From the IMG/VR virus record IMGVR_UViG_3300045125_000168, positions 124,001 through 188,000 of that record: a DNA stretch of 64,000 bases; one strand, given 5' to 3'. Under the pieces are notes generated by a model. It was not told the DNA's origin, made no database searches, and was given only the letters and a program-made list of their open reading frames with translations. Position numbers and translations under genes: made by a program. Shown one piece after another: positions 1,007-59,481 of this stretch (position 1 is the first letter of the stretch; every line of letters starts with the position of its first letter).

Positions 1007-1306
1007 TCACGAGCTTGTCGCGAGAAATGCCTTTGATAAGGAGGGGGAGTTCATCTCAAGATGCTTGCCGTTACCTTCATTCAGTAGAGAGAAAATATCC
1101 CAAGCCTTAAGAGATTGCTCCTCAACGCACTTTAGGATTTCGTGTAAGACCTTGGCTTCGTCACGTATCTCTTCAGCAGTACGACCTGTTTGCAATTCAG
1201 TTTGCCAGTTTTCGTCAGAGGCGCTTCCAGGGGAAAGATCGATGCTATTAGGTCCGTCCTCAGCTTGAAGAAGATACTTATTCTTCACGTGGTCGTAAAA
1301 GCGCAT
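1007..1306 (-). CDS. Leader-bearing hypothetical protein
   Basis: Starts MRFYDHVKNKYLLQAE; GAGG RBS; AAGATT at 1338-1343. Confidence 0.6.
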   Translation of the reverse strand: MRFYDHVKNKYLLQAEDGPNSIDLSPGSASDENWQTELQTGRTAEEIRDEAKVLHEILKCVEEQSLKAWDIFSLLNEGNGKHLEMNSPSLSKAFLATSS

Positions 1307-1367
1307 AGTCGTTCCTCTTGTTGATTCCTAAAAATATAATCTTTGGTAAGACCTCAAAAAAGGGTAA

Positions 1368-1917
1368 TCAATCGATCGTGCCCTTAGGGCTACTGATAGC
1401 ACAGTCGTAATTATCCGCGATAAATTGTGCTCCATAATGAATTGATTTTACAATTTCGTCTTCAAGAGCGACGATTTCGGGGTCTCCAGATCGATTTTTA
1501 TTGATCTGCGGATCAGAGAAATCCCATAAACCAATCAGCATTTTCTGGATTACAATTGAGAATGCATCGGTATTTTTACGCACATCGCAGATGGTCTTGC
1601 AGAAAGTTTTTTTCTGGGCGCCCTGATCATTTGTTAGTTGGACTGGATGGGCAGGGCTATCTCGCACCCCCATCCTCGTTCCTCTTACTGCTGATTGATA
1701 GTTTTGCTAAGTCTTTTGGTTTGGGTAGGTTGTTGACTAGGGGATATGGGATCGACCTCTCTGCTGGATCTTGATCCTGACTTGGCTCTTTTGTCCTCTG
1801 TCCCGCAACCATAGAGCAGTAGGAATGGAATCAGAGATTTTCGGAACTGGTCTTCCAAGCCTCGGGTATTAAACTAGCCTCTATCCGTTCTAACTGAGCG
1901 ATGTAAGACCAAGCCAT
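1368..1917 (-). CDS. Hypothetical protein (frameshifted)
   Basis: Starts MAWSYIAQLERIEAS and appears to join ORF 1368..1673. Confidence 0.4.
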
Positions 1918-1924
1918 GTTACCC

Positions 1925-3905
1925 CTAGTGCGGAAAGTATTTTGCGTCAAAGTGCAGTGATTTGTTGTGCGGTCCATTTTCGTACTGTAGTCGCACCTGA
2001 GAACCGACAACTTGGGCAGACCAAGAGACATCTAAATCTGCTGTTTCTGCGATACGTGTCCACAAACGAAGCATTACCATTATTGGCTCCGACATAAATC
2101 GTGCCGATGCGAACATCCCCGTTCGTTTGGTCTTTTAGGCGGCACTCAATTCGTGCTCCTGCATAATCTGCACTGCTAAAACTCGCAGCCGATATATAAC
2201 CTGACTGATTCGCATCTAAAATGAGGTTGGTATCGTATTTTTCGACTAGATGTAGGCTTGTGTCCGTAGGGTCGTTTTTACCAGCAGCTTTTCTAAAAGT
2301 GGTCGCATGATTGCGAATTTCCCCATCCGGTCCAACTTTTAACCCCAGCGTCAGGCGACCCCGTGGTTTGATTTATGACGGTGGTTTCTGAATAGTTATT
2401 GACCTCTGTTTTCGATTCGTTGACTGTTATAAGAGAGACGTTGCCCTCAAGGTGGTACTCTTGATTGGTGACGTTGATGATGGTGTCTCCGCCACCTAGG
2501 GATAAGTTGTTATTATTTGCTTCAAGGTAATAATTTACGACAGTTGTTCCACCACCACCAATATCTACATCGGCATCAAAGCCAAATTTGACTTTATTGT
2601 TGTTCATCTCAATTTTGCCGCCGCCACCGCCCGTGGAGACGATTTCAAAATTGTTCTCTACATTGGTGACATAATTGGTCGTATCGATTTGGTACTGTAG
2701 TGTTTCATACGTGACATTAGAGATAGTGTTGAACTGATTGTTTATCGTGTTGTTTTGTACATCGAATTGATTATTATTTGTGATCGAGTACGTGTTGAAC
2801 TCGTTATTGTTAGTGATAGAGATGTAGGTATCCCCACCACCTCCGCCACCACCACCTCCACCGAATTTGAAACCGATTTCGTTATTGTTTGCTTGAAAAG
2901 GTCATGTCACCTGTCAAGATGGCTACGGCACCTTCCTCGACGGTGAAAGACGTGCCACCGCCTGTGGATTGCACAACCATGGTTCCATCAATAGTCGTCG
3001 TCGAATTATCGTAAAAATTGATACTGTTATCGACGGTCTCGTAGACGTTGTTAGCGGTTACAAAGACGTTGGTCGTACTGCCCGTGTTTTGTAGAGCAAG
3101 ACCGCGCACATTTTTCCATTTGGAAAGGGATGCATCATATTGCAGAAGGTCATTGTTGCTCACATCGGTGATAAGAATGTTGTCTGCACCGAAAGGCTGG
3201 GAATCGACGTATCCCTTAGTTGCGGCTTCATCTGAATTTTCTGGGGTTGGCAAATTATATATTTTTATAATTATTGCGATCTAAGTCGTAGAATAAAAAT
3301 GATTTATCTAATTTCCCATCAGGATTGGTCGAAATCACTTCATCCCATAGACCAGAACCGTCAGGAGCAGCTTCCCACACGGCCATGACGTTTTGCCATT
3401 TAGTCCCATTCCAACGCGGAAAGTCATTTATGAGAAGGTCCACAATCAGGACGTTATTATCACCGAATATTTGATTGTCTGTGTAGTTTTTTGTTGCCGC
3501 TTCAGAGGGGTCTGTTGGTTCAGGTAAGTTATAAACCGCATATCCGTCTCGGTCCAAATCGTAGTGTAAAAAGCTCGCGTCGAGTTGACCGGAGGCATTA
3601 GTGCCGATCAAGTCATAAGCCGATCCAGAGGTCGCGGTGATGGTCGGTGACGTGGATTGCCAAACCTCACCGTTCCAGGTCATGTAGTCATTTTCTGACT
3701 TACCTGACACATCGATATTATCGGAACCAAATTCTTGCGCGTTGACATAACGCACTGTGGCAAGGTTTTCCCAGCGGTCAATTTGTCGAATCTTGATCGT
3801 CCCGTCCGTGGAGCTATAGTAAAGCGATCCCTCTTCGCTGGTGGCGTTGGGATATGTTTCAAGTGGTGTAAGCTGAATGGGAGTGGAAAAACGATACAGT
3901 TTCAA
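1925..3905 (-). CDS. Fibre/virion structural protein, paralog of 6382..9204 (several frameshifts)
   Basis: Fragments 3255..3905, 2882..3253, 2293..2607 and 1925..2116. Has EAATKxYVD stalk motifs; C-terminus ETADLDVSWSAQVVG...NKSL matches ETDDLGVTWAASVSG...NKSL. Confidence 0.7.
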
Positions 3906-3936
3906 AGTATTTCATGATTAGTAGCTCCAGTAGACT

Positions 3937-12476: not shown

Positions 12477-13246
12477 ATGGATTTTCAAAGAAAAGTTGAA
12501 GCTAAATACCGCATCGTCGCTGCCGATCTTTTGGTTTTTGTCTACGAGACCTTGATGGATAGCGACCTTTGGCAGTTGGTGGTCAAAAAGCTAGGCGATA
12601 AAGCGGGCACTCCCGATAAAATCCTCGGCTACCGCGAGATCAGCGTCGAAACAAACGACGGACCTGACTACCACACGTTAGTCAAAGATCCTGACGAGGA
12701 CGTGGAAGGCTTGGTCTACAGGATCAAACCAGAAGGTTTGGAAAAAGCTCGACCTCTGGGAAAGCCAGTATGAAAGAAAACTTTTATTTTACAAAGTGGC
12801 CGCAAAGCCTATGTCTACGTTTTGAAATCCGAGTCTTTAAAAGATTACGGCAAAAACACCTCTTATCAGGCAAAGCCCGAAGAGCTAGAAGAAGCCGAAA
12901 AATACACGTCGCTGGGCTTTCCTCTAACACCCATGCCGATCGTCAAGCATGTGCTTGACGCCGTGAAAAAAGGCTGAAGACGGGCAAGCATGAGGTCGAT
13001 AACGAGAAGCTCAATAAGTACCTGAAAAAGGAAACACATGGCGATCTGATGGATTTCGCTCGCTCGGCCATCAAATATTTCAAAGAGGGCAAGCTCGACT
13101 GGGAAGAGGGTCTAGGTCTTTTGCAAGAGGAGTATGCCCCCAAAGGACTGGACATCATCCCCTGGTCGTTCCTTAAACGAGAGCTTCAATTCGCAGGACC
13201 GAGCATAGAAAAAAGACTACCTAGAGCTTTAGTGGAGAAGTTTTAA
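12477..13246 (+). CDS. Leader-bearing gamma-glutamylcyclotransferase (GGCT/AIG2)-like protein (frameshifted)
   Basis: MDFQRKVEAKYRIVAA, then LVFVYETLM, VEGLVY, LDLWESQYER and KAYVYV after a frame switch. Confidence 0.65.
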
Positions 13247-14139
13247 TGGGATTTTTTGACGCTTTGAAATTGAAGTATGGCGTAGAAGGTGGCGTGAACG
13301 ACAAGGACTATCCTTACTACCGGGTCAGCGACAATCCAGCAAACCCTTCAGCGACTGAGGATAATAAACGTCATGATCCTTACGGGGTCTACCTTTTTAT
13401 CAAAAAACAATATGTCGATATCGAGGATTGGGGCGGCAAACGATATCGGTGGGATGCAAAGCTGAAGCCTGGGCTGAAACTACTTAATTTTGCAAAAATG
13501 CCAAAGTCTGTCGGATTCGCTATTCTCAAAGCCGCTGGTTTCAAGACCATGACGGAGATTTGGAATCTACATGCGCTTAAGCAAGGAAGTCGTTATGACA
13601 TTCCCAAAGAAGAAGTGTCCCATTTTTTCTATCCTCTCAACCCCAGTGAAGATAATCCCAGCGAAGAACAGTTACAAAAAATAGCAAATAAAAACATCTC
13701 AAATAATCCGAATGTCTATAGGATTATTCGTCTCGTCTATCCGACTAAAATAAAGACTAATCGTAACTTTTCAAAGATTTTTCAACGTCTGGGTTACGAC
13801 GGTATATTGGATTTGGATGGGGCTATGATGACCCTAGAGCCACAGTTAATTGTGTTCAATCCCAAGAATGTCATTTGGCATCAAAGAGAAGAAAACGTCA
13901 TAGATGGAAAGATATATCGACTACCTTTCTCTGAATATAGCCTAGCAAATATATTCATTCGGCAGGGCATAAAAGAGTCGCGAGTCAAAAAAGCGATCAA
14001 AAATTTTATGAGTTTTAACCGTTATTTAGACGATGATGACCCCCAAAAGGATGTTGAGTTTTGGGAAAAGAAAAAATTTGAAGACTTTGAGACTTTCATC
14101 GAAAAAAATATGCACCTGACCAAGAAACAGGTCAGCTAA
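13246..14139 (+). CDS. Leader-bearing ADP-ribosyltransferase-like (ART-PolyVal-like) protein
   Basis: MGFFDALKLKYGVEG; YYR...PYGVYLF...LGYDGI...QLIVFNP. Confidence 0.55.
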   Translation: MGFFDALKLKYGVEGGVNDKDYPYYRVSDNPANPSATEDNKRHDPYGVYLFIKKQYVDIEDWGGKRYRWDAKLKPGLKLLNFAKMPKSVGFAILKAAGFKTMTEIWNLHALKQGSRYDIPKEEVSHFFYPLNPSEDNPSEEQLQKIANKNISNNPNVYRIIRLVYPTKIKTNRNFSKIFQRLGYDGILDLDGAMMTLEPQLIVFNPKNVIWHQREENVIDGKIYRLPFSEYSLANIFIRQGIKESRVKKAIKNFMSFNRYLDDDDPQKDVEFWEKKKFEDFETFIEKNMHLTKKQVS

Positions 14140-14172
14140 GGAAAAGCGGCCAAAACCAAACGGGGAATCATC

Positions 14173-14535
14173 ATGAGCTTCCTATTTAAAGTGCAAAGTC
14201 GCTACCAATTAACGGCAAAATCCATGAAGTTAAAGGGTGTTAAATTAAGTCATTCTTGGAAAAAAATCACAATGAATTATGGATTTATGCCAAGTACAAC
14301 GGGAAGACCATAGGTTCTTTGTTTGTAGAGTCAGATTTCGACGAAATGCGACCTACACACGTAGAAGTGGAAAAAATATAGGCGCAAAGGTATTGCGACC
14401 GCTATGTATGTGTACGCTGAAAAAATAACAGGCGGCAAATTCACTTACCCTGAGGAAGAAGGCCCTTGGGCAGATTCTGTTAGTGAGGAAGCTATAAAAC
14501 TATGGAACCAACCTAATAGACCTTTCGGGAACTAA
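14173..14535 (+). CDS. Leader-bearing GNAT acetyltransferase (frameshifted, absent from ORF track)
   Basis: MSFLFKVQSRYQLTA; RRKGIATAMYVYAEK acetyl-CoA motif; SEEAIKLW. Confidence 0.65.
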
Positions 14536-14556
14536 TAGATCATCCCCCAAGCCCCT

Positions 14557-22059: not shown

Positions 22060-22324
22060 ACCCTTAGAGGGTGCAGCTTTGACGCTGCCTCGCTGTTCTT
22101 TCGAACAGGTGATGTTTGCCTCGCAAATGTCTGAAGAACTTTTGCACAAAAAGGTCCGTCGTATCCCCAAATACGGCAGTGTCCTCTTTTGCAATAGAGC
22201 CAGGAACTGGCAAGCATTCCTGGGTATTATGATTCTTCAAACGTAGTCTCCTTTCAAAGACTAATGCTGGTCATGAACTGGGACTCTTTGACAAGCCCCC
22301 GGCTTTAGCCGTGGGGTTCATGAC
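20711..22324 (-). mobile_element. IS200/IS605-family IscB (OMEGA) element; no tnpA in the window
   Basis: Matching terminal hairpins CCCCACGGCTAAAGCCGGGGG (~22296-22316) and CCCCATGGCTAAAGCCAGGGG (20734-20754) flank the omegaRNA and iscB. Confidence 0.9.
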
Positions 22325-22344
22325 CTGCGAAGAATAGTTTTTGA
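22060..22344 (-). ncRNA. omegaRNA (HEARO-type) scaffold plus 5' guide
   Basis: ~260-nt structured leader GTCA...GACCAGC...GACTACGTT...CCAG...GCTCT...ACATTTGCGAGGCAAAC upstream of iscB. Confidence 0.8.
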
Positions 22345-22538
22345 GTCTGGTGAAATTTTCATCAGTTCAAGAACGATGTTCGTCATGTCCAAGTCCTTGC
22401 CAAAGTGTTTTTTGTGGATCTTTTGCAAGGCTTCGACGCTCTCTTTGACGTAGGGGTCTTTTTCCATAGCGGCCTGCAAATAACTCCAGGCATAACCTTC
22501 CACAGAATTTTTTCTTTGACCTTTGCAAGATAGCTCAT
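22325..22538 (-). pseudogene. 5' half of a leader-bearing gene interrupted by the IscB element; 3' half at ~20593-20712
   Basis: MSYLAKVKEK-SVEG...SKTILR; removing the element can join it to DVRGWFVP...GKRRA*. Confidence 0.55.
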
Positions 22539-25853: not shown

Positions 25854-26192
25854 GGGAACTTGTCTCCACAATGTTTTTAAGAGTTTTTGGAAAAAGAGAT
25901 CGTTTTACTACTGCAACCCCAGGACGAATTTTTATTCGCCTGATGAATCGGCTAGACAAGGGAGACTTTCGCTTTCCCAGCCTTATAATTGAGTTATGTC
26001 CTCGCGGTCTTTAGAGCGCAGAGGCACTAATTAGGTAAAAGGGGTGACTTCTAAAATAATCTTATCGGTCAATTTGCGAGGCGTCAAATTCGCTGGTTTT
26101 TTGTGTATAACTAACTGTAATTGTTGTTGGAAATTGTCTCAAGTTTACGTTCGGTTGTACCGATAGGTAGGCGTTAAACTTGGGAGAGTACC

Positions 26193-33080: not shown

Positions 33081-33380
33081 TCACCTCACTTTGAGTGGTG
33101 AATTGTTTGTATACTTACGAGTCATTAACGCCTTGAGGTAGCGTTCTTCTGAATTGACGGGGATTCTTGCTTTGAAAACATTGTACCAAGCCTCACGAAA
33201 GTTTTTAAGAGCCTTCGCGTATTCTTTAGACTTTTGTTTGTTCGGGTCTTGTTGACGATACAAGAACAGGAGTTCTTGACGCGCATCTTCTAATTTCATG
33301 CGATGAGCGTCGTAATCTTCATCCCCGTCCTGAGCGAGATCATCAAAAGCGAGGCAACGGACCTTTTCAAGAAAGGACAT
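33081..33380 (-). CDS. Leader-bearing hypothetical protein
   Basis: MSFLEKVRCLA; GAGGAG RBS. Confidence 0.65.
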   Translation of the reverse strand: MSFLEKVRCLAFDDLAQDGDEDYDAHRMKLEDARQELLFLYRQQDPNKQKSKEYAKALKNFREAWYNVFKARIPVNSEERYLKALMTRKYTNNSPLKVR

Positions 33381-41362: not shown

Positions 41363-41655
41363 ATTAGTGAGTTCGGAGCCTAGCTAGGGTAATCAAACGT
41401 CATACTCGTCAAAGTTTCCATATTTGAGATACCAATCGATCATTTTTTTGCTTCATTTATATCGTGGGCGATTGGCTGTCCCTGATTTAGTATCTCTCCA
41501 AGGTACTTACCAATTTTTTGGTCATAAATTATATAATTTTCATAGTCATCATCTTCTGCAAGATCAATATCAAAGCCTTTGTACACCCTTGCTGTACTTG
41601 AGGTAACCATTTTCGGCTGATATTTCTTTTTGACTCGCTGCAAAAACATGTTCAA
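41363..41655 (-). CDS. Leader-bearing small hypothetical protein
   Basis: MFLQRVKKKYQP; AAGATT at 41686-41691; 3' end approximate. Confidence 0.55.
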
Positions 41656-43939: not shown

Positions 43940-46900
43940 TTAGCGAGCAAGTTGAACTAGAAGACGAAATAACTCTTCTTTTGCGTGATGTTGAACTTTG
44001 GCGTTCTGAATCGGGTTTGGAATGTTACGCGAGTGTTGCGGCAATCGGTATTTGAATCGCGTATTTTGTTGCTCGTTCTTATGCTCATCCGTCAACTTTT
44101 GCTCCGACACCAAATGCTTGATGTGTTCTTTGACCGTATCGTTTCCTACGATATATGTCTTGTCGATAACAGCCTGGGAGATTGCATTTTGATGGTGACT
44201 GTTGGTGATGGCATCCGCAAGCATAATCGCCCTGTCTTCAGTCACATAATCAGCGGAGATAAAAGGAAGGACCGAGCCTCGCCTTTCAGAGCTTACTTTT
44301 TCAAAAACTTTTGGTGCCTCATCGGGAGCAATCTTCAACAGATCAAAAATGATGAGTCAGGTCTAGTTTTTCTGCGTGAGACAACGCGACCGCAGCTTCC
44401 TCTTTGCTTGGCTTGAAATCTTTCAGCGAGAGATTGTTGACAATACCAGGATTGTTGAACATCTTTAGCCGTTGATCGGCACCGAGAAAAGGACCAACGA
44501 TACTGGTGATGGTTTCAAAATCGTTGTAGAATCGCGATTTCGTCCAATCCTTGCGCGTGTAAAGATCGGCGAGAAATGCGCCATTTTCTGGATCTTCCGC
44601 CAGTTTTCGGAAAGAAATCTCTATGATCTCGGTGTCGGTCGAAGTCTCGGCAATCTTGCGGATCTCAGGATACGCGAGGTTACCAGACTGTTGAATAAGA
44701 AAGCGTAGAGTGTATCGATTGTACCCGCTTTTCTTCAAAGCCTGTGCCGCTGTCTCAGGCGCAATGGAAAAATCATCGGCTTCAACCGAACGTTCATAAA
44801 ATTATTGAAAAATTCTGGGCTTCTACAATTTTATTCTCTATCGTCCTGTTGTCATGTGATCTTTCAGAAGACTGTAAAGACGCGGATGCCTCTGCCGACC
44901 CGGATGGTGCAGGTGGCGTAATAAAAGTGTCAATTAAGAACCGATGGTTTGCCTTATCCTTTACAAGTGTTTCGTAGGCTTTATGAACCAAGTTTGTCGC
45001 TTATTCCTTTTGCCGCGATATCTTTTAAAAACTCTGGGTCTTGGATTTTTGGTATAATTTTCTCGGCAATTTGTTCTTCGCCCCAGTCTTTTGCCTCCAG
45101 GACATAGTTTTCAAGATGTCTTGATTCTTAATTCGCGAGGCGAGATTGGACACCACTTTTTCGTCTTTGGCTTTGAGGAACGCTTGTTCTAACGTCTTCA
45201 TATCGTCTTTAAAGGCGGGGAGCGCATCAGCACCGATGTTTGGATCATTGAAGAGAACAGATTTCAAAACCTTGAGGTCTTTAACATAGGGAAGTGCCGC
45301 TTTGCGCACGTCAGGGTCTACACTTTTGAGAGTCAATTCCGCATATTGTTCAGGACTCAGAGACGCTATCTTATGAAAGGCTTTCAAACCTAAATTGCTG
45401 TTTTCGAGCGCGATCTTATAAAGGTTTTCTGGCTTCTTGATATTTTTCAAGCATTTTGTGATTGATGTGTTTGATGCCAGAATTTTCGATCAGGAAATCC
45501 TCGTCTTTGATATGTTTGAGAATTTCATCTCGAAATTCTTCCTTTGTCTTATAGTATTTCATCAAGAGTTTTTGATCGTCGGCGATTTTGTCGATCAAAA
45601 GATCTCTTCTATCTAACTTATATTTCTTATCTCCTCCGATTTTGCCGTCTAATATCTTCACCACGGTCTTCTTGTCGAGCTTCCTAAGACCGTAGCTATG
45701 TGTGTCGTCGTCATCGAAATCATTGACGAGATACTCGGCAATTTTCTCTGGATTCTTGCGGAGCTTCAGATCAAGATATGACGAACACCCTTATTTCTTT
45801 CTTTCATCAAGAGCTTGAGAAGGATGTCGGGGTCCTCAATGTTCTTTATAATTTTTTCGCGTGGACCACTCTTCTTCTCTTTCTTGAGGAGACTTTCTAA
45901 ATAGGCGATATCCTCAATCACGGAGAGCGCCTGATAGTCTGCGGTTTTCTCATAGTATTTCTTAATGAAATCCTGGTTTTTAGCAAGTTTCGCGAGCCAG
46001 TCTTTGCTTAATTTCCCACCCTTAAGGGCCTCTTCCATCACGTATTTTTTATCTTCAATATGGTCGAGTGTTAGGTTGAAGTTAGCGCCATTGCTCGTCC
46101 TTAATCTAGCCCTCTGCTCTTTTTTCCAAGCATCGTCATCAATATACGCCCAAAGCTCGGGTTCAGTCTTGGCGATGTCTTTGATTTTTGATTTGTCTTC
46201 CAGGCGCGGCAGAACGATTTCCGGTGCCTCAACGACAAATTTTTTGAGAAAGGTTTTGATCTTTGGAGATACTGAGTGCGAGCAAAAATAAGTCGTCTTC
46301 GCGAGAATGATACCTGCGTTCTTTCAAGTTTTGGTCGCAGCTTTTTTCACCAGCTTCCGTCCCTCGCAGCTTATACAATGCGATTGCTCCTAGCGTCCTC
46401 TGTATGCATACCATCAACTTGCAGAATTTTTTCTAAAACCTTTTTATCTTGAGATTTGAGAGCAAGAGCGGTAGCTAGTCTGCGAAATTGATCTTTACTG
46501 TAAGCCATGCCAATTTTCCGGATCAGCTTCTGATCGGTCACACCTTCTAACAGATCAGAATGATAATCATGATCCAAAGATGGGTGTTCAAATCAAATCG
46601 ACGAGCGTATTTTTCGTTTTCGATCTTTTTCAACGCCTCTTCGGTCTGAATTTTACCAAAATTTTTGACGATAAAATTTTGATCTTTCAAGAGCTTACTA
46701 AGTTCTGAGGCCGGAAAATTTGACATATCCCACGGTCGGGCTAAGAAAAGCTCTTGGGCATCTTTTCGAGGAGTTAGTTTCCTTGCGGCTAGGCGCTTAA
46801 CCGATTCGTAACTTTTGAAAGAATTAGTTTTTCAAAAAGGCGACGTCCTGGACCTTTTCTAACGCGGCTAATTTGTCGTGTACTTTCTTGGATTTTAGAA

Positions 46901-47210
46901 CGGCTTCCTGATGGGCCTTTTCAACTTCTGGGGAATTTTTCTTTGGCGCATTCTTTTTGCTTTTTCTGACGTGAATCGCTGTCGTCTTCGTCGGTGTCCC
47001 CCTCGTCATCCTGCTTTTCAAATGTTTTGATGCTCTTATGTTTCTCAAAGTTTTATTTTTCTGGACAATCATTGCAGGTCGTCGATAGACTTGATTTGCT
47101 TTTCAACGTGGATTCCTCTTCCCAGGTTCATAAAAGTGCCAAGAGTTACCCCAACCCAAGACCGCATATCGTTCTGCCACTTTTTCCAAAAGTTGAGTCA
47201 AGGAAGCCAT
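43940..47210 (-). CDS. Leader-bearing large alpha-helical repeat protein (heavily frameshifted)
   Basis: MASLTQLLEKVAERYAVLG; many fragments with I.D..IL..I helical repeats. Confidence 0.55.
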
Positions 47211-50427: not shown

Positions 50428-50817
50428 TTAGGTAATTTCGCTCCGCAGCAGTGACACCAGAAGTCCCGATCCTTTCAAAATCAGATGCATATTCTGCATC
50501 GTTTCGGAACCACATTGCGGGCATTCTACTTTTTGCAAATAGTCTTTTTTGAGATCATCCCTCAGCAGGCGCTCAAGCTGCATCGGGGTAAGCTCTTCAA
50601 TAAAACGCGCATACTTGCCCGAGAGAGGGCTGAAAGGATCAAGCCCCATCTCGGCATAGTATTGCTTCCCAGTCTCTGGGTCTTCATAAAGCCCGTAAGA
50701 AAACCCGCATCCGGTGGTGGTCCTCGAAAGAGATACACCGGACGATATGGCTGGTAATCGGTGGGTTTCTGGGTGTAAGGAAGTAGGCCCCCCACCAAAT
50801 CCTAAAATTAGTTTCAT
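50428..50817 (-). CDS. Hypothetical protein with CPQCG Zn ribbon
   Basis: 129-aa ORF. Confidence 0.5.
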   Translation of the reverse strand: MKLILGFGGGPTSLHPETHRLPAISSGVSLSRTTTGCGFSYGLYEDPETGKQYYAEMGLDPFSPLSGKYARFIEELTPMQLERLLRDDLKKDYLQKVECPQCGSETMQNMHLILKGSGLLVSLLRSEIT

Positions 50818-51583
50818 GACGGGCGACTCATGGTTTTAACATAATCCGAGCCTAGAATCTGCGTGACCGCACCCAACGCCCATTTTTCCCAGGTTTTCTG
50901 CGATTTCGTCGGAGCGAGACTGCTCGTGACTTCCAGAACGCGAAGATCGGACACATCCTTCGCGGCTTTGGCCAAGGTCACAATCTTTTCTCGGGGTAGT
51001 TCATAACGACTCCATGCGAGAGCAGATCCTGCATGGTCCAAGACCTCTTCGGCAATCGTTAGAAGCTCACGACGCAAACCCAAGTGGCAAGCGTCTTCAC
51101 TTGCAGAAGCCACGACAGGGGCTGGAAGCTCCAAGTCACCGACCGTCCAGTCCTGCTTCAGGTTGTAAGTGCAGATCACCGAGGCTTGGTCTTTCTGGGC
51201 GATCGCGACTTTCGCGTTCAACTCTTCAGCACCGATGGTGAACTCGCCAAGCGGAACAGCCGCGCCTTTGGTTTCCATCAGAAGAGCGTTGATCTCGTCT
51301 TGGAACGCTTTGAAAGCCGGGTTCAAATCTTGCTCTAGCTTGGTCAAAGCCGCTAAAATGCGCGATTTCGGGTCGATCGGTGCGGCTTCTTCTGGCGCAG
51401 GCGCAGCTTCTTCCTCAGCTTGCTCCTCGGCCTCTGGCGCTTCCTCGGGTTCCTCAGCAGGGGCCTCGGCAACCTCTTGGAGTGCGATCACGGCGAGGCG
51501 TTCCGCATCTTTTTTGAGATCGATCCTGCCTCAACCTTTTTTCTTAATTCAGACAAAAACGCTAGAGTATGAGCGCGTTGCAT
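50814..51583 (-). CDS. Acidic protein with leader-like N-terminus (frameshifted)
   Basis: MQRAHTLAFLSELRKKVEA joins ORF 50814..51491. Confidence 0.55.
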
Positions 51584-51595: not shown

Positions 51596-52077
51596 TTAGA
51601 GTTCGTTGCGCAGAAGGGATTGAAGCTCGTGCGTGTGTTCCTGCTCTTTGGCCAGGATGTTTTCTAATTCTATTTTAAGGGGGAGTCTTCGCCAAGCTGC
51701 GAAATGATCTTCCCGTATAAGGCAACAGCCTCTTGCTCAAACTTGAGTTGCAACCGAATCAGGTCTTCAATCTTAGACCCCTTCGGAAGCTCGGGAATGA
51801 TGTGGCGCTTGACCGTAGGTCGTTCACCCATTCCGACGATGTAGCGTTGCAGGAGAGAAATATGCGAGGCTTCTTCTCCGGCATTTTCCTCGAAATCCGC
51901 AGCAATCGCTGGGCTACAAAGACCGAGGAGCGATTCTTTATAGGCGTAGTAAAGATCCCACTGCCTAAATTCGCCCATCAAGGCTTCTTGCAAAAGTCCA
52001 AGAACCCCCACGTCCTGAGCCGATAAGAGATCGGCAGGAGTAGCGGCTAAGACATATAATTTGCGCAAGAAAGACAT
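51596..52077 (-). CDS. Leader-bearing ferritin/bacterioferritin-like protein (frameshift near 3' end)
   Basis: MSFLRKLYVLA; E...Y, EEASH, E.EAVALY and EQEH di-iron ligand pattern. Confidence 0.75.
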
Positions 52078-52112: not shown

Positions 52113-52388
52113 TTATTTTTTCAAACTGCTGAGATACAACCACTTCGCAAGAGCCGTGCGAATCTGTTTTTTGACGACCGCGAACTGCTCGGCGTTCTGA
52201 GCTTTTTCCAACTCTGTTTTAACTTTGTTCTCAATGCGAGATAAGTGACCAGCAAAGTCACTGCGCATTTTGTCTAAATCTTGGTTGACCACTTTCCACG
52301 CCTCTTCACCCAAAAACTCTTTGGTCGCGGGCGATAAGGTCGAACCAAGCGCCTTTTTGCGGTTGACTTTTTTCAAGAATGAAACCAT
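52113..52388 (-). CDS. Leader-bearing hypothetical protein
   Basis: MVSFLKKVNRKKALG; AAGATT at 52421-52426. Confidence 0.6.
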   Translation of the reverse strand: MVSFLKKVNRKKALGSTLSPATKEFLGEEAWKVVNQDLDKMRSDFAGHLSRIENKVKTELEKAQNAEQFAVVKKQIRTALAKWLYLSSLKK

Positions 52389-53980: not shown

Positions 53981-54471
53981 ATGCAGACCTTCCTGAAACG
54001 TGTTGCTGATAGATATAGTGTCGTGGCTGAGATTGGCTCGGGCAAACACGCCCTGACAACCGACGAGAGCGGGAAGTTTTGGGGGAACGCAGGTGCAGGG
54101 GGAGTGTTTTGGGCTAAGGAGACGGGCCGTATCCTTCTAGCGTACCGCAGCGCCTTGGTGAATGAGCCGCACACTTGGGGTGTGTGGGGTGGGGCCGTGG
54201 ACAAGGGCGAATCGCCAGAAGATACCGTGAGACGAGAAATCAAAGAAGAGACCAAGTACGCTGGGGCCTATCAACTCAAGCCGCTCTACGTCTACCAAAA
54301 CGGCAACTTTCGTTATCACAATTTTCTTATTACCGTGCCAAAAGAGTTTGACCCGATCCTCTGCTGGGAAACCGAAGACTTTGGATGGTTTGACTTAGGG
54401 GCTTTCCTAAGCCGCTGCACTTCGGTCTCAAAGCTCTTTTGCCGCACTTAGAAAAAGAAATCAAAAGGTGA
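53981..54471 (+). CDS. Leader-bearing Nudix hydrolase
   Basis: MQTFLKRVADRYSVVAE; Nudix box GAVDKGESPEDTVRREIKEET. Confidence 0.9.
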
Positions 54472-54476: not shown

Positions 54477-55067
54477 ATGTTGTACAGCTTCCTTGAACAG
54501 GTATCGGCAAAGTACGCCGTGATTGCTGAACCCACCCTGACCCTGTGGCATGGTGGTAACCTGGAGTTTTCCTCGGAAAGCATCTCACATCGGGGTGGTA
54601 GATGGGAGCACGGTCCTGGCCTTTATCTCACCACGCACTATGATACAGCAAAAAAATATGCCAAAGGGTCTCGCAAGCTCTATCAAGTTGTCGTTCGGGA
54701 GGGAAAAGATCTTTCCGACGTGAACTTACCGATCGATGCTGTTCATGCTTTTATAGATGAGTATTTTATTCGAGCGCGTAAGCGAGACTTGTTAGCGCGA
54801 ATCGAAAAGCATGTGGTGAATAACAAAATCAACGCCGAGACTTTTTTGAATATTACGATCAATGAAAATGGCATCAGAAACACGGATACCGATCGGTTGA
54901 GAAATTTTTTAGTCCAGCAAGGAGCCGACTATCTGGTTGTGGATAACCCTTTTGGTTGGGGCGAAAGAATGCTTGTGCTTTTCAACATGAAAAACATGGT
55001 TAGTAAGAAAAGAATAACGCCAAAAGACACTATTGAAGTGTTTGATCTGCCGAAAGAGTTTGCCTAA
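54477..55067 (+). CDS. Leader-bearing ADP-ribosyltransferase-like protein (H-Y type, ART-PolyVal-like)
   Basis: MLYSFLEQVSAKYAVIAE; LWHGG...GPGLYLT...AKKYA...LVLFN. Confidence 0.65.
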   Translation: MLYSFLEQVSAKYAVIAEPTLTLWHGGNLEFSSESISHRGGRWEHGPGLYLTTHYDTAKKYAKGSRKLYQVVVREGKDLSDVNLPIDAVHAFIDEYFIRARKRDLLARIEKHVVNNKINAETFLNITINENGIRNTDTDRLRNFLVQQGADYLVVDNPFGWGERMLVLFNMKNMVSKKRITPKDTIEVFDLPKEFA

Positions 55068-56950: not shown

Positions 56951-56955
56951 TAATC

Positions 56956-57375
56956 TTACTTTGGAAGCCTAACCATCTCAGCGGACCCCCGCAAAACAAA
57001 CCCGTGGCGTCCGTAGAATTTCTTGAGCCTGCCTAGTGGAGTGCTCCCTTGGCGTCGTGGTCCCACACCGACATGAAGCTGCAAGACCACTTGGTACTTG
57101 TCAGCAAGCTCCGTCAGGTATCGGAGAGCCTCAGTCCCCGCACCTGAGCCTTTCTCAGCGGCACTGAGCCAGGAGATATAGACCGTGGGCTTGGTCCTCT
57201 CCTTCGTCTCAAGATCTAAAAAGGCACCGCCCTTGGAGGTCTGCAAAGCGTACCCCAGACCTCGGAAGTAACCCTTGGCCTTGGTTTTGAACTCGTCTAC
57301 CAGCTTTTGCGCTGGGGCATCCTCGGCACATAACACGGGATATTTGCGCTGCACGGAAGAAAAAACATGCCGCAT
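56956..57375 (-). CDS. Leader-bearing GNAT acetyltransferase
   Basis: MRHVFSSVQRKYPVLCAE; KGSGAGTEAL...LADKY...LKKFYGRHGF. Confidence 0.75.
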   Translation of the reverse strand: MRHVFSSVQRKYPVLCAEDAPAQKLVDEFKTKAKGYFRGLGYALQTSKGGAFLDLETKERTKPTVYISWLSAAEKGSGAGTEALRYLTELADKYQVVLQLHVGVGPRRQGSTPLGRLKKFYGRHGFVLRGSAEMVRLPK

Positions 57376-57490: not shown

Positions 57491-57720
57491 ATGGTCGAAA
57501 AATGGATAGGCATCAAAGAGATCGCGGAGCACCTGGGCATTTCCGTGGTGACGATCTATAGATGGGTTGAAAATGGAAAAATCCCTTGCCACAGGGTCGG
57601 CAAACTCTGGAAGTTCAAACCTTCAGAGGTCGATGCCTGGGTGAGCAGCGGGCAGGCTTCGGGAACGAGTAAGACGAAAAAGAAAAAGAAGAAAAAAGCT
57701 CTAAATAATTATTTTACCTT
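57491..57720 (+). CDS. Excisionase-like HTH DNA-binding protein
   Basis: IKEIAEHLGISVVTIYRW...IPCHRVGKLWKF...VDAW. Confidence 0.85.
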
Positions 57721-58182
57721 AAAACCTTCACCCATCATCTCTTCTTTGAGAATTTCAAGCATATTGTCAGCAGCATAGTCGATCTCCGGGTTCACAATAC
57801 CGTCTGCGTTTTTCTTTTCACCCGTTTCGATATTGGTCGTAAGATCACCCACCCGCGTAATTTTTATACCTCGGGCCGAACCGTCCTCACACTTATAGGT
57901 GATCGAAACGGTGAAAACCTTGTCGTTCACCTTTTTCAGTTTCGCATCGACCTTGCACTCGACACCCGCATCCTGAAAAACTTTGGTCACGTCTTTGGCA
58001 AACGTATCCAACTTTTTGTCCGAAAACGTCATGCCGTGGGCAAAGGTGCTAAAAAGTCCTGTTCCGACGAGAACAGTGACCGTTTTTTTCAACTTATTCA
58101 AAAAGTCAAATTTGGCTTCAATCCTAGAACAATAGGAATAGGAGATTTTTTTGGCTTGGACTTTTTGAATATAACTGGCCAC
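57709..58182 (-). CDS. Leader-bearing protein with a hydrophobic segment
   Basis: MASYIQKVQAKK...SRIEA; TVTVLVGTGLFSTFAHG. Confidence 0.55.
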   Translation of the reverse strand: MASYIQKVQAKKISYSYCSRIEAKFDFLNKLKKTVTVLVGTGLFSTFAHGMTFSDKKLDTFAKDVTKVFQDAGVECKVDAKLKKVNDKVFTVSITYKCEDGSARGIKITRVGDLTTNIETGEKKNADGIVNPEIDYAADNMLEILKEEMMGEGFKVK

Positions 58183-58209
58183 TTGAAATCTCCTTCGATT
58201 GCCGCTGAA

Positions 58210-58944
58210 TTATCTGGAGCCGATTTTTTCCGCAATCTCAAAGAAGTTAGAACCATCCTTTTTCAGTAAAGGTATCTTGCTACGATCAATCCGCCACATC
58301 TGTGATGGCATCAGGATGCCTTCATGCGCGATGTTACCGTACTCATCTATAAGCTCAAGTTTCTGCTTGTCTGAAAGCAAAGGAAGAAGGATCTTTCCTG
58401 CTTTTATCCAAGCATCATAACACCCTTGAATAACTTCTTCGAGAAGAGTGGCGTTGTATTCTTCAACAGGTTCTACTTCAAGGTAGTCTTCCGCTAAATC
58501 TCTGAGCCACTTCCTCTTTTTCTTATCGAAGGCATCACGCGCAGCTTCACCGATCTGATCCTCGTCAGGATGGATATTCTGTAGTTCTTTACCAGAAATA
58601 ACAAACATGAATCCATAACGACCGCGTTTCTTTATCAAATCATATATGTATTCACTGTTAGTTCCTGCTACTGCCGCACCGAGAGCATAATGAAGTGCAT
58701 AGCCGACATTTTTGCTGATATATACCCTGTCATCTACTGCTCGGCTAAAACCTTTAGTGCGTGACATATTTGGTTTGATGCCATGCTTCCATATTTTTTG
58801 CGCTTTTCTCTCGGTGGTGGTCCCATGGTAATAAAAAGCGTTTTTTATTGCGTCATGTGGCAAGGCACTTTCGCAAACATCAACGTCTTCGTTGAGTGAA
58901 TATTTGGCCAATACTTTTGTGAAAAAGTTCACAAAATACTCCAT
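58210..58944 (-). CDS. Leader-bearing ART-like protein
   Basis: FFTKVLAKYSL; YYHGTT...GIKP...VYIS...ALHYA. Confidence 0.6.
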   Translation of the reverse strand: MEYFVNFFTKVLAKYSLNEDVDVCESALPHDAIKNAFYYHGTTTERKAQKIWKHGIKPNMSRTKGFSRAVDDRVYISKNVGYALHYALGAAVAGTNSEYIYDLIKKRGRYGFMFVISGKELQNIHPDEDQIGEAARDAFDKKKRKWLRDLAEDYLEVEPVEEYNATLLEEVIQGCYDAWIKAGKILLPLLSDKQKLELIDEYGNIAHEGILMPSQMWRIDRSKIPLLKKDGSNFFEIAEKIGSR

Positions 58945-58968
58945 GAAATTTGTATACCAGGAAAGATC

Positions 58969-59481
58969 CTACTTCGACTTCATGATATAACGAGTCTGCA
59001 CTGTACCCGGTAAGACTATGACCTCTTTTTCTTCGAGGACATCCTGCCGCAAAGCACTGTCAATGCCAGAGACTCTCGTTATATCGACAAGTATTAATGA
59101 TGGAGGAACTATGGCTTCCAGAACAATACCCTTCGTATGTGACTTAATATATCCACCAGAGTATGGGAAAAAGGCGAAACTCCGGGCTGCGTCTAGATCT
59201 TTGGACCAAGATGAAAGCTGGTCCGAGTGCAAAGAGAAGCTCTCACCTAACTCCAGTTTTTTGCCTGCTAAAGCTCGGATTAGTTTTTCAGGAGTTTTGT
59301 AATTACCTACCGAGATACCGCGATATAGCTTAAGAGAACGCTTGGGACTGGCTTCTTTTAAGCTCTCAATGATGTCAGGAGATGGTGGATCTTTGATATC
59401 AGAAATCCATTCTTCCAGCCATTCAATGGCATCATACCCCGGCCAAGTTTTTGCGATGATTTGTTTTAAAAAACTTTTCAT
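58969..59481 (-). CDS. Leader-bearing R-S-E type ADP-ribosyltransferase
   Basis: MKSFLKQIIA; LYRG...SSWS...EEKEVIV. Confidence 0.75.
   Translation of the reverse strand: MKSFLKQIIAKTWPGYDAIEWLEEWISDIKDPPSPDIIESLKEASPKRSLKLYRGISVGNYKTPEKLIRALAGKKLELGESFSLHSDQLSSWSKDLDAARSFAFFPYSGGYIKSHTKGIVLEAIVPPSLILVDITRVSGIDSALRQDVLEEKEVIVLPGTVQTRYIMKSK

What the first reader, a model, noticed from the sequence alone, without database searches (positions are those of the whole stretch)
1007..59481. Shared N-terminal leader on ~18 unrelated proteins: candidate capsid-targeting, cleavable cargo-loading system
Seen in the sequence: starts 1306 MRFYDHVKNKYLLQA, 12477 MDFQRKVEAKYRIVA, 13246 MGFFDALKLKYGVEG, 14173 MSFLFKVQSRYQLTA, 22538 MSYLAKVKEK-SVEG, 41649 MFLQRVKKKYQ, 47210 MASLTQLLEKVAERYAVLG, 51583 ...AFLSELRKKVEA, 52388 MVSFLKKVNRKKALG, 53981 MQTFLKRVADRYSVVA, 54477 MLYSFLEQVSAKYAVIA, 57375 MRHVFSSVQRKYPVLCA, 58182 MASYIQKVQAKK and 58944 ...FFTKVLAKYSL. 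Short forms: 28072 MVFLKKLLVLA, 33380 MSFLEKVRCLA, 52077 MSFLRKLYVLA and 59481 MKSFLKQIIA. The consensus is an amphipathic basic helix, F-L-x-K-V-x-x-K/R-Y-x-V-x-A/G, directly followed by unrelated domains. The genes lie on both strands across 58 kb. The motif is too charged to be a Sec signal and is absent from rmlA/C/D, the helicase, the fibres and the secreted enzymes. Established: T4 internal proteins use a short N-terminal capsid-targeting sequence that the head protease removes. Inference: this is an analogous but distinct modular address tag that loads a swappable payload into the prohead, possibly useful for protein delivery.
Basis: partly seen in the sequence, partly recalled or inferred. 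Interest (0 to 1): 0.92.

Follow-up and report, generated by a model that had tools for sequence, protein, structure and literature searches.

The report
Shared capsid-address tag on phage proteins
About 17 otherwise unrelated small proteins of this uncultured jumbo phage start with the same 10-17-residue tag, which most likely works like the phage T4 'capsid targeting sequence' that loads proteins into the virus head for injection into the host; so it is a new version of a known trick, not a new principle.

Summary
All 18 N-termini are at the stated coordinates. A scoring matrix trained only on other genomes puts 12 of the 14 long forms above every control. Synonymous codons vary, so the conservation is at the protein level, and the protein bodies are unrelated.

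The window comes from a 351-kb metagenomic jumbo-phage contig with a phiRSL1-like capsid protein. A 262-kb relative has about 21 tagged genes in 30 kb, directly upstream of its capsid gene.

The key result is tag swapping. Homologues of three cargo families keep the domain but change the N-terminal tag according to the phage they sit in. In T4-like contigs the tag is the T4 internal-protein leader (MKTYQEFIAE type). The other genes of each locus share the local tag: 70 matches against 15.7 expected.

In the window, the tagged cluster begins right after a prohead protease gene. A model built from intact orthologues of that gene has the T4 gp21 fold.

My reading is a lineage-specific capsid-targeting tag on a fast-turning-over set of probably injected proteins (NUDIX, ART-like, ferritin-like and others). 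Packaging into the head and cleavage of the tag are inferred, not shown. The tag ends in aliphatic-x-Ala/Gly/Ser, not the Glu that gp21 requires. The 51583 case is the conserved N-terminus of a scaffold-like protein. This is a new variant of a known kind.

The parts
1007..1306 (-). Tagged gene, 99 aa, long-form leader MRFYDHVKNKYLLQA; no family match
   Evidence: Independent PSSM 11.9 bits. AAGATT box 37 nt upstream.
12477..12773 (+). Tagged gene, 98 aa, leader MDFQRKVEAKYRIVA; GGACT (gamma-glutamyl cyclotransferase-like) body
   Evidence: Pfam PF06094 E 1.4e-4, at the cut-off. PSSM 16.5 bits.
13246..14139 (+). Tagged gene, 297 aa, leader MGFFDALKLKYGVEG; body of unknown family
   Evidence: PSSM 9.4 bits. 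Leave-one-out score weak, 2.1.
14173..14313 (+). Tagged gene, leader MSFLFKVQSRYQLTA; reading frame broken after 46 codons (assembly indel). The GIY-YIG ORF at 14557-15051 is probably a separate homing-endonuclease gene.
   Evidence: PSSM 21.2 bits.
22318..22538 (-). Tagged gene, leader MSYLAKVKEK...; frameshift in an A6 run after codon 10, continues in ORF 22318-22503
   Evidence: PSSM 7.3 bits. AAGATT box 35 nt upstream.
27884..28072 (-). Tagged gene (short form MVFLKKLLVLA|DD), 62-aa piece; weak match to a ParB C-terminal-domain PHROG
   Evidence: phrog_2579 E 9e-6. Half-PSSM 6.5 bits, marginal. AAGATT box.
33081..33380 (-). Tagged gene (short form MSFLEKVRCLA|FDD), 99 aa, unknown family
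   Evidence: Half-PSSM 12.7 bits, above all controls.
41440..41649 (-). Tagged gene, leader MFLQRVKKKYQ, 69-aa piece, unknown family
   Evidence: PSSM 20.4 bits. Leave-one-out 12.0. AAGATT box.
46824..47210 (-). Tagged gene, leader MASLTQLLEKVAERYAVLG; in-frame stop after 35 codons, likely indel; continues in 46824-47072
   Evidence: PSSM 11.0 bits. Leave-one-out 8.6. AAGATT box.
50814..51583 (-). Acidic (pI 4.5) scaffold-like protein. Its conserved N-terminus (AFLSELRKKVEAG) resembles the leader. Frameshifted. A doubtful member of the tag set and a candidate docking partner.
   Evidence: 36% identical ortholog in L012, pI 5.2; ortholog directly after the protease in L081. PSSM 5.4 bits. Leave-one-out 1.0.
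51670..52077 (-). Tagged gene (short form MSFLRKLYVLA|A), 135 aa, ferritin-like/rubrerythrin body
   Evidence: PF00210 E 5e-7. Half-PSSM 10.0 bits. AAGATT box 28 nt upstream.
52113..52388 (-). Tagged gene, leader MVSFLKKVNRKKALG, 91 aa, unknown family
   Evidence: PSSM 15.6 bits. Leave-one-out 10.7. AAGATT box.
53981..54451 (+). Tagged NUDIX hydrolase, 156 aa, leader MQTFLKRVADRYSVVA|E
   Evidence: PF00293 E 6e-13. Leader present in about 30 of 42 homologues, absent in distant and cultured ones. AF2: residues 1-20 pLDDT about 65, helix 4-11, coil to 36, fold from 37. PSSM without its own family 24.4 bits.
54477..55067 (+). Tagged LWHGGN-domain protein (DUF3990 / ART-PolyVal-like, both below the Pfam cut-off), 196 aa, leader MLYSFLEQVSAKYAVIA|E
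   Evidence: 256 homologues with four or more clade-specific leader types at the same junction. T4-type leader on the homologue in L014.
56956..57375 (-). Tagged gene, 139 aa, leader MRHVFSSVQRKYPVLCA|ED (one-residue deletion in the N-terminal half). The body matches part of a 3925-position PHROG profile.
   Evidence: phrog_10691 E 1e-5. Leave-one-out 5.4. Ungapped PSSM only 2.0. AAGATT box.
57709..58182 (-). Tagged gene, GTG start, leader (M)ASYIQKVQAKK, 157 aa, with a hydrophobic segment after the leader
   Evidence: PSSM 12.2 bits. Leave-one-out 4.5.
58210..58944 (-). Tagged YYHGT-domain protein, 244 aa, leader ...FFTKVLAKYSLNE|D
   Evidence: PSSM 18.8 bits. 594 homologues, and the match always starts at query residues 22-36. 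20 of the top 150 embed the domain in 640-3090-aa proteins. Stand-alone homologues carry this tag, a T4-type tag, or none.
58969..59481 (-). Tagged gene (short form MKSFLKQIIA|K), 170 aa, first gene after the protease
   Evidence: Half-PSSM 12.0 bits.
59488..60253 (-). Prohead (head maturation) protease gene, in three frame pieces (two indels), immediately upstream of the tagged cluster
   Evidence: 35% identical to phiRSL1 ORF132. phrog_18299 E 2e-30. Intact orthologues are about 245 aa. AF2 model of the closest listed orthologue (P0163, 86% identical to the window piece): best PDB match is T4 gp21 (5JBL), prob 1.00, TM 0.52, next best prob 0.12 or less. AAGATT box 61 nt upstream.
24765..25871 (-). 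Major capsid protein (context: the shell the cargo would be loaded into); carries no leader
   Evidence: phrog_2522 E 7e-57. 31-34% identical to the capsid proteins of phiRSL1, Lu11 and Yoloswag. N-terminus shown.

Best explanation
The leader is a lineage-specific capsid-targeting sequence. It has a long form, F-L-x-K-V-x-x-K/R-Y-x-V-x-A/G/S, and a short form, F-L-x-K-V/L-x-x-L-A. It is a short N-terminal address tag that brings otherwise unrelated small proteins into the assembling prohead of this phiRSL1-related jumbo phage, so that they are enclosed with the DNA and delivered into the next host cell.

Shown here:
- The tag is N-terminal and selected at the protein level.
- It is fused to unrelated bodies that turn over fast between relatives.
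- Its sequence type follows the resident phage rather than the cargo.
- In T4-like contigs, the same cargo families carry the experimentally characterised T4 internal-protein leader at the same junction.
- The tagged genes sit in or next to the head module, after a prohead protease gene whose orthologue-based model has the gp21 fold.

Inferred:
- The basic tag docks on a prohead-core component. The acidic scaffold-like protein at 50814-51583 is the obvious candidate.
- The protease then removes the tag at the conserved aliphatic-x-Ala/Gly/Ser end.
- The freed cargo (NUDIX, ART-like, ferritin-like, GGACT-like and unknown proteins) is ejected and acts early, probably in host takeover or counter-defence.
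For: 1. Real, protein-level, N-terminus-specific motif.

2. Unrelated bodies and turnover. Only one ortholog pair is shared between 18 window proteins and 22 in a relative whose capsid protein is 78% identical.

3. In the clean 262-kb relative, 16 of 17 consecutive co-oriented genes directly upstream of the capsid gene carry the tag, and more lie further upstream.

4. Tag swapping on homologous cargo.
- The LWHGGN family has type 1 (this tag), type 2 (LLxALxKVxA), T4-like M[KL]S[YF]K[EQ][FY]..E, and MKxLKxFxE, all ending about 2-15 residues before the conserved domain.
- The YYHGT family has type 1, many ...aliphatic-x-E|MAxP leaders, leaderless forms that start at MAxP, and copies embedded in 640-3090-aa proteins.
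- In the NUDIX family, distant and cultured homologues lack the tag.

5. Genome specificity. In 30 non-redundant loci, the cargo's own leader matches 70 other ORF N-termini in its own locus against 15.7 expected from other loci. L014 carries T4_neck-protein and Terminase_6, and at least 11 of its 34 genes have leaders like T4 ipI-III. T4 ipII and ipIII start MKTYQEFIAE and ipI starts MKTFKEF.

6. Literature. T4 internal proteins share only a capsid targeting sequence that loads them into the scaffolding core and is removed by gp21 (PMC3012670, PMC5694885, PMC12373910). The N-terminal 30 residues of P1 DarB do the same job (PMC9024508).

7. The protease gene lies directly upstream of tagged genes 59481, 58944, 58182 and 57375. 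The orthologue model has the gp21 fold. The same protease, then scaffold-like, then tagged-gene order occurs in L080 and L081.

8. AF2 shows the tag as a low-confidence helix (residues 4-11) plus coil, detached from the NUDIX fold.

9. Co-regulation hint: an AAGATT box lies upstream of 10 of 18 tagged genes against 5 of 63 untagged ORFs (p=4e-5). It also precedes the protease gene and the head-fibre-like operon.
Against: - There are no virion or proteomic data for any phage with this tag, and no cultured relative carries it.
- Cleavage is unproven. The residue after the small residue is variable (E 9, N 6, K 5, T 4, S 4 and others). The aliphatic-x-A/G/S pattern is loose: 52% of control N-termini also contain it.
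- T4 gp21 cuts after Glu, which is not conserved here. Either the specificity differs or many tags are not removed.
- The hydrophobic moment is not above controls.
- About 21 tagged genes in 30 kb is far more cargo species than documented for T4, which could point to another destination.
- Several tagged genes in the window (1306, 12477-14173, 28072, 33380, 41649) lie far from the head module.
- The temporal class of the AAGATT box is unknown, and it is not a sigma-70-like promoter.
- The T4-like status of L014 and L015 rests on Pfam marks on neck and terminase genes only.
Confidence: 0.7

Rival explanations
1. The leader is an address tag for a destination other than the capsid interior. Possibilities are another phage-built assembly, the membrane, or a recruitment hub. 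The resemblance to the T4 arrangement would then be convergent.
For: The number of tagged proteins is very large. The phage has unusual cell-biology genes nearby, namely an actin-like Volactin homologue and an RRM protein inside the head module (context). 58182 has a hydrophobic segment after the tag. There are no virion data.
Against: The same cargo families carry the T4 internal-protein leader in T4-like contigs. Tagged genes nest between protease and capsid genes in three genomes. The tag has no hydrophobic core for Sec or membrane insertion. One cargo domain is also a module of giant multidomain proteins of the kind described as injected polyvalent proteins (PMC7824862).
Confidence: 0.15
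2. The shared N-terminus is a regulatory element rather than an address. It could be an N-terminal degron or chaperone-recognition signal, or a translation-initiation region constraint shared by co-regulated genes.
For: The tagged genes of the window share an upstream AAGATT box, so they are co-regulated. N-terminal recognition motifs for host proteases are also short and basic/hydrophobic (own knowledge).
Against: Synonymous codons vary freely, so there is no mRNA-level constraint. In the relative L010 the genes are packed in an operon without the box, yet keep the tag. The tag type changes with the phage's head-assembly lineage, not with the host-side machinery. T4-type tags on the same cargo are known packaging signals.
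Confidence: 0.07
3. The similarity is a by-product of recombination. On this view, gene starts are conserved because cassettes are shuffled through homologous gene-start and promoter sequences, as proposed for promoter-stem-loop cassettes in T4-type hyperplastic regions (recalled from memory).
For: The arrays turn over quickly between relatives. Window genes have a repeated upstream box.
Against: There is no DNA-level conservation in the leader codons. All synonymous codons are used at the conserved positions. Upstream regions beyond the 6-nt box are not alignable. The conservation pattern is physicochemical and extends over clades with 50-60% identical cargo.
Confidence: 0.03

Closest known systems
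Phage T4 capsid targeting sequence (CTS) of internal proteins IPI-III and Alt
   Same: It is a 10-20-residue N-terminal leader shared by otherwise unrelated, fast-evolving small proteins. The phage has a gp21-fold prohead protease. Homologues of two of the window's cargo families carry T4-type leaders in T4-like contigs. The literature describes loading into the scaffolding core and removal by gp21 (PMC3012670, PMC5694885, PMC12373910).
   Different: The sequence differs: a basic FLxKVxxKYxVxA against MKTYQEFIAE. The end is aliphatic-x-A/G/S instead of aliphatic-x-Glu. There are long and short forms. There are many more tagged genes per genome (about 21 in 30 kb of the relative). The phage lineage has a phiRSL1-like capsid protein. 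Packaging and cleavage are untested here.
Phage P1 DarB N-terminal packaging signal
   Same: It is an N-terminal signal of fewer than 30 residues that is sufficient to send a heterologous protein into the capsid, and the cargo is an anti-restriction protein delivered with the DNA (PMC9024508).
   Different: P1 has one large cargo with a stepwise Dar assembly pathway. It is not a shared tag on dozens of small genes, and there is no sequence similarity.
N-terminal propeptides of phiKZ/SPN3US head and ejection proteins
   Same: These are jumbo phages in which a gp21-like protease removes N-terminal propeptides thought to target proteins to the prohead. Two SPN3US propeptides are short, 20 and 24 residues (PMC10052503, PMC5694885).
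   Different: Most of those propeptides are 111-254 residues long. The cleavage motif ends in Glu. There are nine substrates, not a repeated short tag on many unrelated small proteins.
Polyvalent proteins of phages and conjugative elements
   Same: The domain repertoire overlaps. The YYHGT domain of 58944 is embedded in 640-3090-aa proteins. There are weak ART-PolyVal/DUF3990 hits and a match to a 3925-position PHROG. These proteins are described as injected with the DNA (PMC7824862).
   Different: Here each module is a separate small gene with its own address tag, instead of being strung together in one giant polypeptide.
Herpesvirus assemblin cleavage sites ((V/L/I)-x-Ala|Ser; recalled from memory)
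   Same: The protease superfamily has the same fold as gp21. The preference for P3 aliphatic and P1 Ala resembles the conserved end of the tag and the invariant V-Y-A(-S) at residues 11-14 of the protease family.
   Different: No cleavage data exist for this phage lineage. The residue after the small residue is not Ser-biased. This is a lead, not a test.
Encapsulin cargo-loading peptides
   Same: A short peptide plus linker directs diverse enzymes, including ferritin-like proteins, into an HK97-fold shell. 52077 is a tagged ferritin-like protein.
   Different: Encapsulin peptides are mostly C-terminal with a different motif and are not cleaved, and the shell carries no DNA (own knowledge).

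Membership tests
T4-type capsid targeting sequence (Ip leader) | Short N-terminal leader shared by proteins with no other similarity | tested here: met
T4-type capsid targeting sequence (Ip leader) | Leader sequence of the MKT[YF][QK]EF..E type | tested here: not met
   The window leaders are FLxKVxxKYxVxA. The T4 type is seen in T4 itself and in L014.
T4-type capsid targeting sequence (Ip leader) | Leader ends at a gp21 site (aliphatic-x-Glu) | tested here: not met
   Glu follows the small residue in only 9 of 42 KY-type leaders. The conserved end is aliphatic-x-A/G/S.
T4-type capsid targeting sequence (Ip leader) | Phage encodes a gp21-type prohead protease | tested here: met
   The window gene matches phrog_18299, E 2e-30. 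The AF2 model of its orthologue P0163 has T4 gp21 (5JBL) as best PDB match, prob 1.00, TM 0.52, E 5e-3. Sequence-profile comparison with gp21 is not significant.
T4-type capsid targeting sequence (Ip leader) | Leader is sufficient for packaging and is removed in the head | not testable with these tools
   This needs virion or procapsid biochemistry. No cultured phage with the tag was found.
Modular, genome-specific address tag (functional class) | Homologous cargo carries a different leader in a different phage lineage, and other genes of each genome share the local leader | tested here: met
   (70 against 15.7 expected).
Sec/Tat signal peptide | Hydrophobic core of about 10 or more residues after a basic n-region (twin-Arg for Tat) | tested here: not met
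   By inspection only, no predictor was run: the leaders are 10-17 residues long with Lys/Arg interspersed, and have no hydrophobic run and no RR motif.
Polyvalent-protein effector modules (cargo bodies) | Same domain found inside giant multidomain phage or conjugative-element proteins | tested here: met
   For 58944, 20 of the 150 best homologues are 640-3090 aa with the domain internal. For 57375, phrog_10691 positions 2690-2777 of 3925. For 54477 the Pfam ART-PolyVal/DUF3990 hits are below the cut-off, so inconclusive.
Direct DNA repeat / mobile cassette | Conservation at the nucleotide level, including synonymous sites and flanks | tested here: not met

The most novel reading that the evidence does not exclude
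Large myoviruses in general use genome-specific N-terminal 'address codes'. At least five sequence types were seen here: this tag, LLxALxKVxA, the T4 type, MKxLKxFxE, and LNEQIxRMKxMMG. If so, the whole set of injected proteins of an uncultured phage can be read from sequence alone. In this phiRSL1-related lineage the code marks dozens of proteins per genome. Its Ala/Gly/Ser end would mean a gp21-fold protease that has switched from Glu to small-residue P1 specificity, as in herpesvirus assemblin.
Probability: 0.35. Interest if true: 0.8.

Novelty: new variant of a known kind. Interest (0 to 1): 0.62.

Why it matters
If the tag is a packaging signal, it gives a sequence-only way to list the proteins that an uncultured jumbo phage injects with its DNA. 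Those are the likeliest early host-takeover and counter-defence factors, most of them of unknown function.

It would also show that the T4 internal-protein strategy is widespread and greatly expanded in other large phages. The tag sequence appears to co-evolve with the head-assembly machinery.

It makes a testable prediction about the specificity of a gp21-fold protease.

It would offer a second, unrelated tag for loading foreign proteins into phage heads in laboratory systems, as is already done with T4 and P1.

Tried and rejected
- The first all-against-all N-terminus script timed out. The vectorised version gave only a modest excess, 25 pairs at score 24 or more against 8-12 in controls, because the greedy ORF set is diluted by spurious ORFs.
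- hmmsearch with the 14-column window HMM was too insensitive on the relative L010. I replaced it with a regex test and an ungapped PSSM.
- Cultured relatives. There is no DNA match. The phiRSL1 and BcepSauron NUDIX genes and 40 kb around them have no tag. There is no cultured homologue of 54477.
- Type-2 NUDIX contigs (L009, L013) showed no arrays near the gene, and one contig had no DNA on file. So genome specificity of type 2 was not tested there.
- The capsid protein's N-terminal ...RLVGA was considered as a cleavage site. It is conserved inside the capsid family, including BcepSauron, so it says nothing.
- Extra HMM hits at 5155(-) and 31135(-) were rejected as C-terminal or out of frame.
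- Protease against T4 gp21 by profile comparison was not significant, and there was no PDB sequence hit. Only the fold search linked them.
- The sigma-70 and terminator scan of 51-60.5 kb showed no enrichment.
- Stop-codon recoding was considered as the cause of the broken ORFs. No single stop explains them.
- Literature searches found no description of this motif.

Full report
**Source and context.** The window is part of IMG/VR UViG_3300045125_000168 (236 kb). That record is a trimmed version of a 351,605-bp JGI contig. It is a phage.
- ORF 24765-25871(-) is a major capsid protein (phrog_2522, E 7e-57). It is 31-34% identical to the capsid proteins of the jumbo phages phiRSL1, Lu11, Yoloswag and Motura.
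- No cultured phage is close at the DNA level.
- Many genes are broken by frameshifts (helicase, protease, several tagged genes). No single stop-codon reassignment explains this. The breaks look like homopolymer indels of the assembly.

**Observation.** All 18 N-termini exist as quoted. Four independent lines show they are not chance.
- Leave-one-out HMMs give 7 of the 14 long forms at least 8.4 bits. The mean best score anywhere in a shuffled six-frame window is about 6.3.
- A PSSM trained only on 48 leaders from other genomes gives 12 of 14 long forms 7.3-24.4 bits. That is above all 89 untagged N-termini (maximum 4.2) and all 840 internal windows (maximum 7.3).
- Three of the four short forms beat all controls on the N-terminal half of the matrix, and 28072 is marginal.
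- The window-derived pattern [KR]Y.[VILT].[AGS] is found at 9 N-terminus-like positions in an independent 20-kb locus against 0.06 expected. It is found at none in 40 kb each of phiRSL1 and BcepSauron.

The conservation is at the protein level. TTT/TTC, AAA/AAG, all four Val codons, TAT/TAC and GCT/GCA are all used at the conserved positions. After removal of the first 20 residues, the tagged proteins have no BLASTP similarity to one another.

- The helical hydrophobic moment is not higher than in controls (0.48 against 0.45, p=0.06), although the leader is more basic (+2.1 against +1.0, p=0.001).
- The 51583 case is the conserved N-terminus of an acidic scaffold-like protein that has orthologues in relatives.

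**Relatives.** A clean 262-kb ENA contig (loci L010 and L012) has a capsid protein 78% identical to the window's.
- It carries the leader on 16 of 17 consecutive co-oriented genes directly upstream of the capsid gene. Four to five more lie further upstream, giving about 21 in 30 kb.
- Only the NUDIX gene is shared with the window's tagged set, so the bodies turn over quickly while the tag stays.

**Cargo.**
- Recognisable bodies are NUDIX (53981), a GGACT-like domain (12477), a ferritin-like domain (52077), and an LWHGGN domain with sub-threshold DUF3990/ART-PolyVal hits (54477).
- 28072 gives a weak ParB-C-like match. 57375 matches part of a 3925-position PHROG profile.
- The NUDIX domain occurs fused to proteins annotated as portal or protease in Bcep1 and BcepB1A.
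- The YYHGT domain of 58944 has 594 homologues. 20 of the best 150 are 640-3090-aa proteins with the domain internal. This fits the 'polyvalent protein' repertoire described as injected with phage DNA (PMC7824862).

**Tag swapping (the key result).**
- NUDIX homologues. About 30 of 42 have an N-terminal leader ending in aliphatic-x-A/G/S, followed by an acidic linker before the conserved IGxGKHALTTD. There are two flavours, FLxKVxxKYxVxA and LIxALxKVIA. The most distant homologues and the phiRSL1 and BcepSauron proteins lack it.
- LWHGGN family (256 hits). The domain always starts 15-30 residues from the N-terminus, and the extension type follows the clade. The closest homologues have type 1. 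Others have type 2, M[KL]S[YF]K[EQ][FY]..E, or MKxLKxFxE.
- The third type is the T4 internal-protein leader. T4 ipII and ipIII begin MKTYQEFIAE and ipI begins MKTFKEF. The contig carrying that homologue (L014) has T4_neck-protein and Terminase_6 genes. At least 11 of its 34 genes have such a leader.
- A 414-kb contig with a T4 gp13-like gene (L015) has its own flavour on six genes.
- YYHGT family. Stand-alone homologues carry type 1 (the closest ones), T4-like leaders ending ...aliphatic-x-E directly before a conserved MAxP, or no leader and start at MAxP.
- Systematic test. I fetched 61 more viral loci with the LWHGGN profile. In 30 non-redundant loci, the cargo's own leader matches 70 other ORF N-termini in the same locus. 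Applying the same leader to the other loci predicts 15.7.
- There are clear local dialects: L074 has MxLNEQIxRMKxMMG on eight ORFs, L069 has MKIxELLxE, and L047 has MRYHEIIxE.

So the N-terminal tag is a property of the resident phage, not of the cargo.

**Link to head assembly.**
- The window encodes a head maturation protease at about 59488-60253(-). It is in three frame pieces, matches phrog_18299 (E 2e-30) and is 35% identical to phiRSL1 ORF132.
- It is immediately followed by tagged genes 59481, 58944, 58182 and 57375.
- Intact orthologues are about 245 aa. An AF2 model of the closest listed orthologue (P0163, 86% identical to the window piece; pLDDT 76.5, pTM 0.75) finds T4 gp21 (5JBL) as its only credible PDB match. 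That match has prob 1.00, TM 0.52 and E 5e-3, and every other hit has prob 0.12 or less. Sequence profiles do not detect this relation.
- In L081 the order is protease, scaffold-like acidic protein, tagged gene, Gly-rich protein, tagged gene, RRM protein, large protein, then the capsid protein further on. L080 has a tagged gene right after the protease. The arrays of the window and of L010/L012 look like expansions of this module.
- A portal-like gene lies just beyond the right end of the window.

**Structure of the tag.** AF2 of the tagged NUDIX protein, using 43 homologues, gives pLDDT about 65 for residues 1-20. It shows a short helix at residues 4-11 (FLKRVADR) and then coil up to residue 36, where the confident NUDIX fold begins. 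The Y-x-V-x-A part has the alternating pattern of an extended strand. That is how protease substrates usually bind (inference).

**Mechanism proposed.**
- Shown: the tag is modular, genome-specific, N-terminal and selected at the protein level. It sits on the same cargo families that carry the T4 packaging leader in T4-like contigs, and it is genomically tied to a gp21-fold protease and the head module.
- Established elsewhere: T4 leaders load internal proteins into the scaffolding core and are removed by gp21. These proteins are injected and inhibit host restriction systems (PMC3012670, PMC5694885, PMC12373910). The N-terminal 30 residues of P1 DarB do the same job (PMC9024508).
- Inferred: the basic tag docks on a prohead-core component, perhaps the acidic scaffold-like protein. 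The cargo is enclosed, the tag is clipped after the small residue, and the cargo is ejected with the DNA.
- Cleavage is the least secure step. The residue after the small residue varies, the aliphatic-x-A/G/S pattern is loose, and gp21 itself needs Glu.
- The protease family has an invariant V-Y-A(-S) at residues 11-14. This and the tag end resemble the (V/L/I)-x-A|S sites of herpesvirus assemblin, which has the same fold. That resemblance is recalled from memory, so it is a lead only.

**Rivals.**
- A different destination cannot be excluded without virion data. The very large number of tagged proteins is the main argument for it.
- A degron or expression signal is unlikely, because codons vary and the tag type tracks the head-assembly lineage.
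- Recombination cassettes are contradicted by the absence of DNA-level conservation.
- Chance is excluded.

**Novelty.** The principle (diverse injected proteins that share only a capsid-targeting leader) is textbook for T-even phages. At least ten Ip genes have been reported, found through their signal sequence (PMC12373910). What is new is this tag sequence, its long and short forms, its non-Glu end, the lineage it occurs in, and the scale of the arrays. Six literature searches found no description of it. I rate it a new variant of a known kind.

Noticed in passing
window, e.g. 1343(-), 12447(+), 22573(-), 28113(-), 41691(-), 47258(-), 52105(-), 52426(-), 53951(+), 57406(-), 60314(-), 9562(-): A hexamer AAGATT, often (C/A)AAGATT(T/A), lies 28-61 nt upstream of 10 of 18 tagged genes against 5 of 63 untagged ORFs (p=4e-5). 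It also precedes the protease gene and the operon of the 940-aa head-fibre-like protein. It is a candidate phage-specific promoter element. It is not sigma-70-like and is absent from the operon-like array of the relative L010.
   Followed up: partly
window, many genes (e.g. 14173-15051, 22318-22538, 38028-39208, 46824-47210, 59488-60253): Frequent frameshifts and premature stops, including in an SNF2-type helicase and the prohead protease. No single stop-codon reassignment explains them. They look like homopolymer indels of a long-read assembly rather than pseudogenes, because intact orthologues exist in other metagenomes.
   Followed up: partly
L006 /: The JGI source contig is 351,605 bp, whereas the IMG/VR record is 236,430 bp. 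So the viral record was trimmed. The real genome may be larger, or the contig may include non-viral sequence.
   Followed up: no
L074 (IMGVR_UViG_3300023179_004149, 321 kb): Eight ORFs besides the LWHGGN homologue start with a quite different shared leader, M(K/N)LNEQ(I/L)xxMKxMMG(I/L). This appears to be another address dialect.
   Followed up: partly
protease orthologues, alignment A3 (residues 11-14): An invariant V-Y-A, usually followed by Ser, sits in an otherwise variable and low-confidence N-terminus of the protease family. It has the same aliphatic-x-Ala form as the tag end and may be a self-processing site.
   Followed up: no
window 50010-50318(-), L012:4154-4417, L081:12524-12766: A small RRM-type RNA-binding protein gene is conserved inside the head-morphogenesis module, between the protease and the capsid gene, in three phages.
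   Followed up: no
L079:4538-5553 (just right of the window), L080:3208-4227: An actin-like gene (Pfam Volactin in L080) sits next to the portal-like gene. In the source phage it is split by a frameshift.
   Followed up: no
window 20711-21814(-), 22580-24577(-), 14557-15051(+): Homing-endonuclease-type genes flank the capsid gene or sit next to tagged genes: an RRXRR/HNH protein, a 665-aa GIY-YIG protein with many HTH repeats, and a second GIY-YIG ORF.
   Followed up: no
window 5155(-) region, C-terminus of ORF 5093-5710(-): A leader-like string, FFRQVAAKYPQP, occurs at the C-terminal end of a 205-aa protein rather than at an N-terminus. It may be chance, or the remnant of a gene start fused in by an indel.
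   Followed up: partly
window 15947-16846(+), 52418-52945(-), 52933-53826(-): The rmlA-, rmlC- and rmlD-like genes are dispersed, and rmlC and rmlD are interleaved with tagged genes. L006 also shows a superoxide-dismutase-like gene and a metallophosphatase gene left of the window.
   Followed up: no
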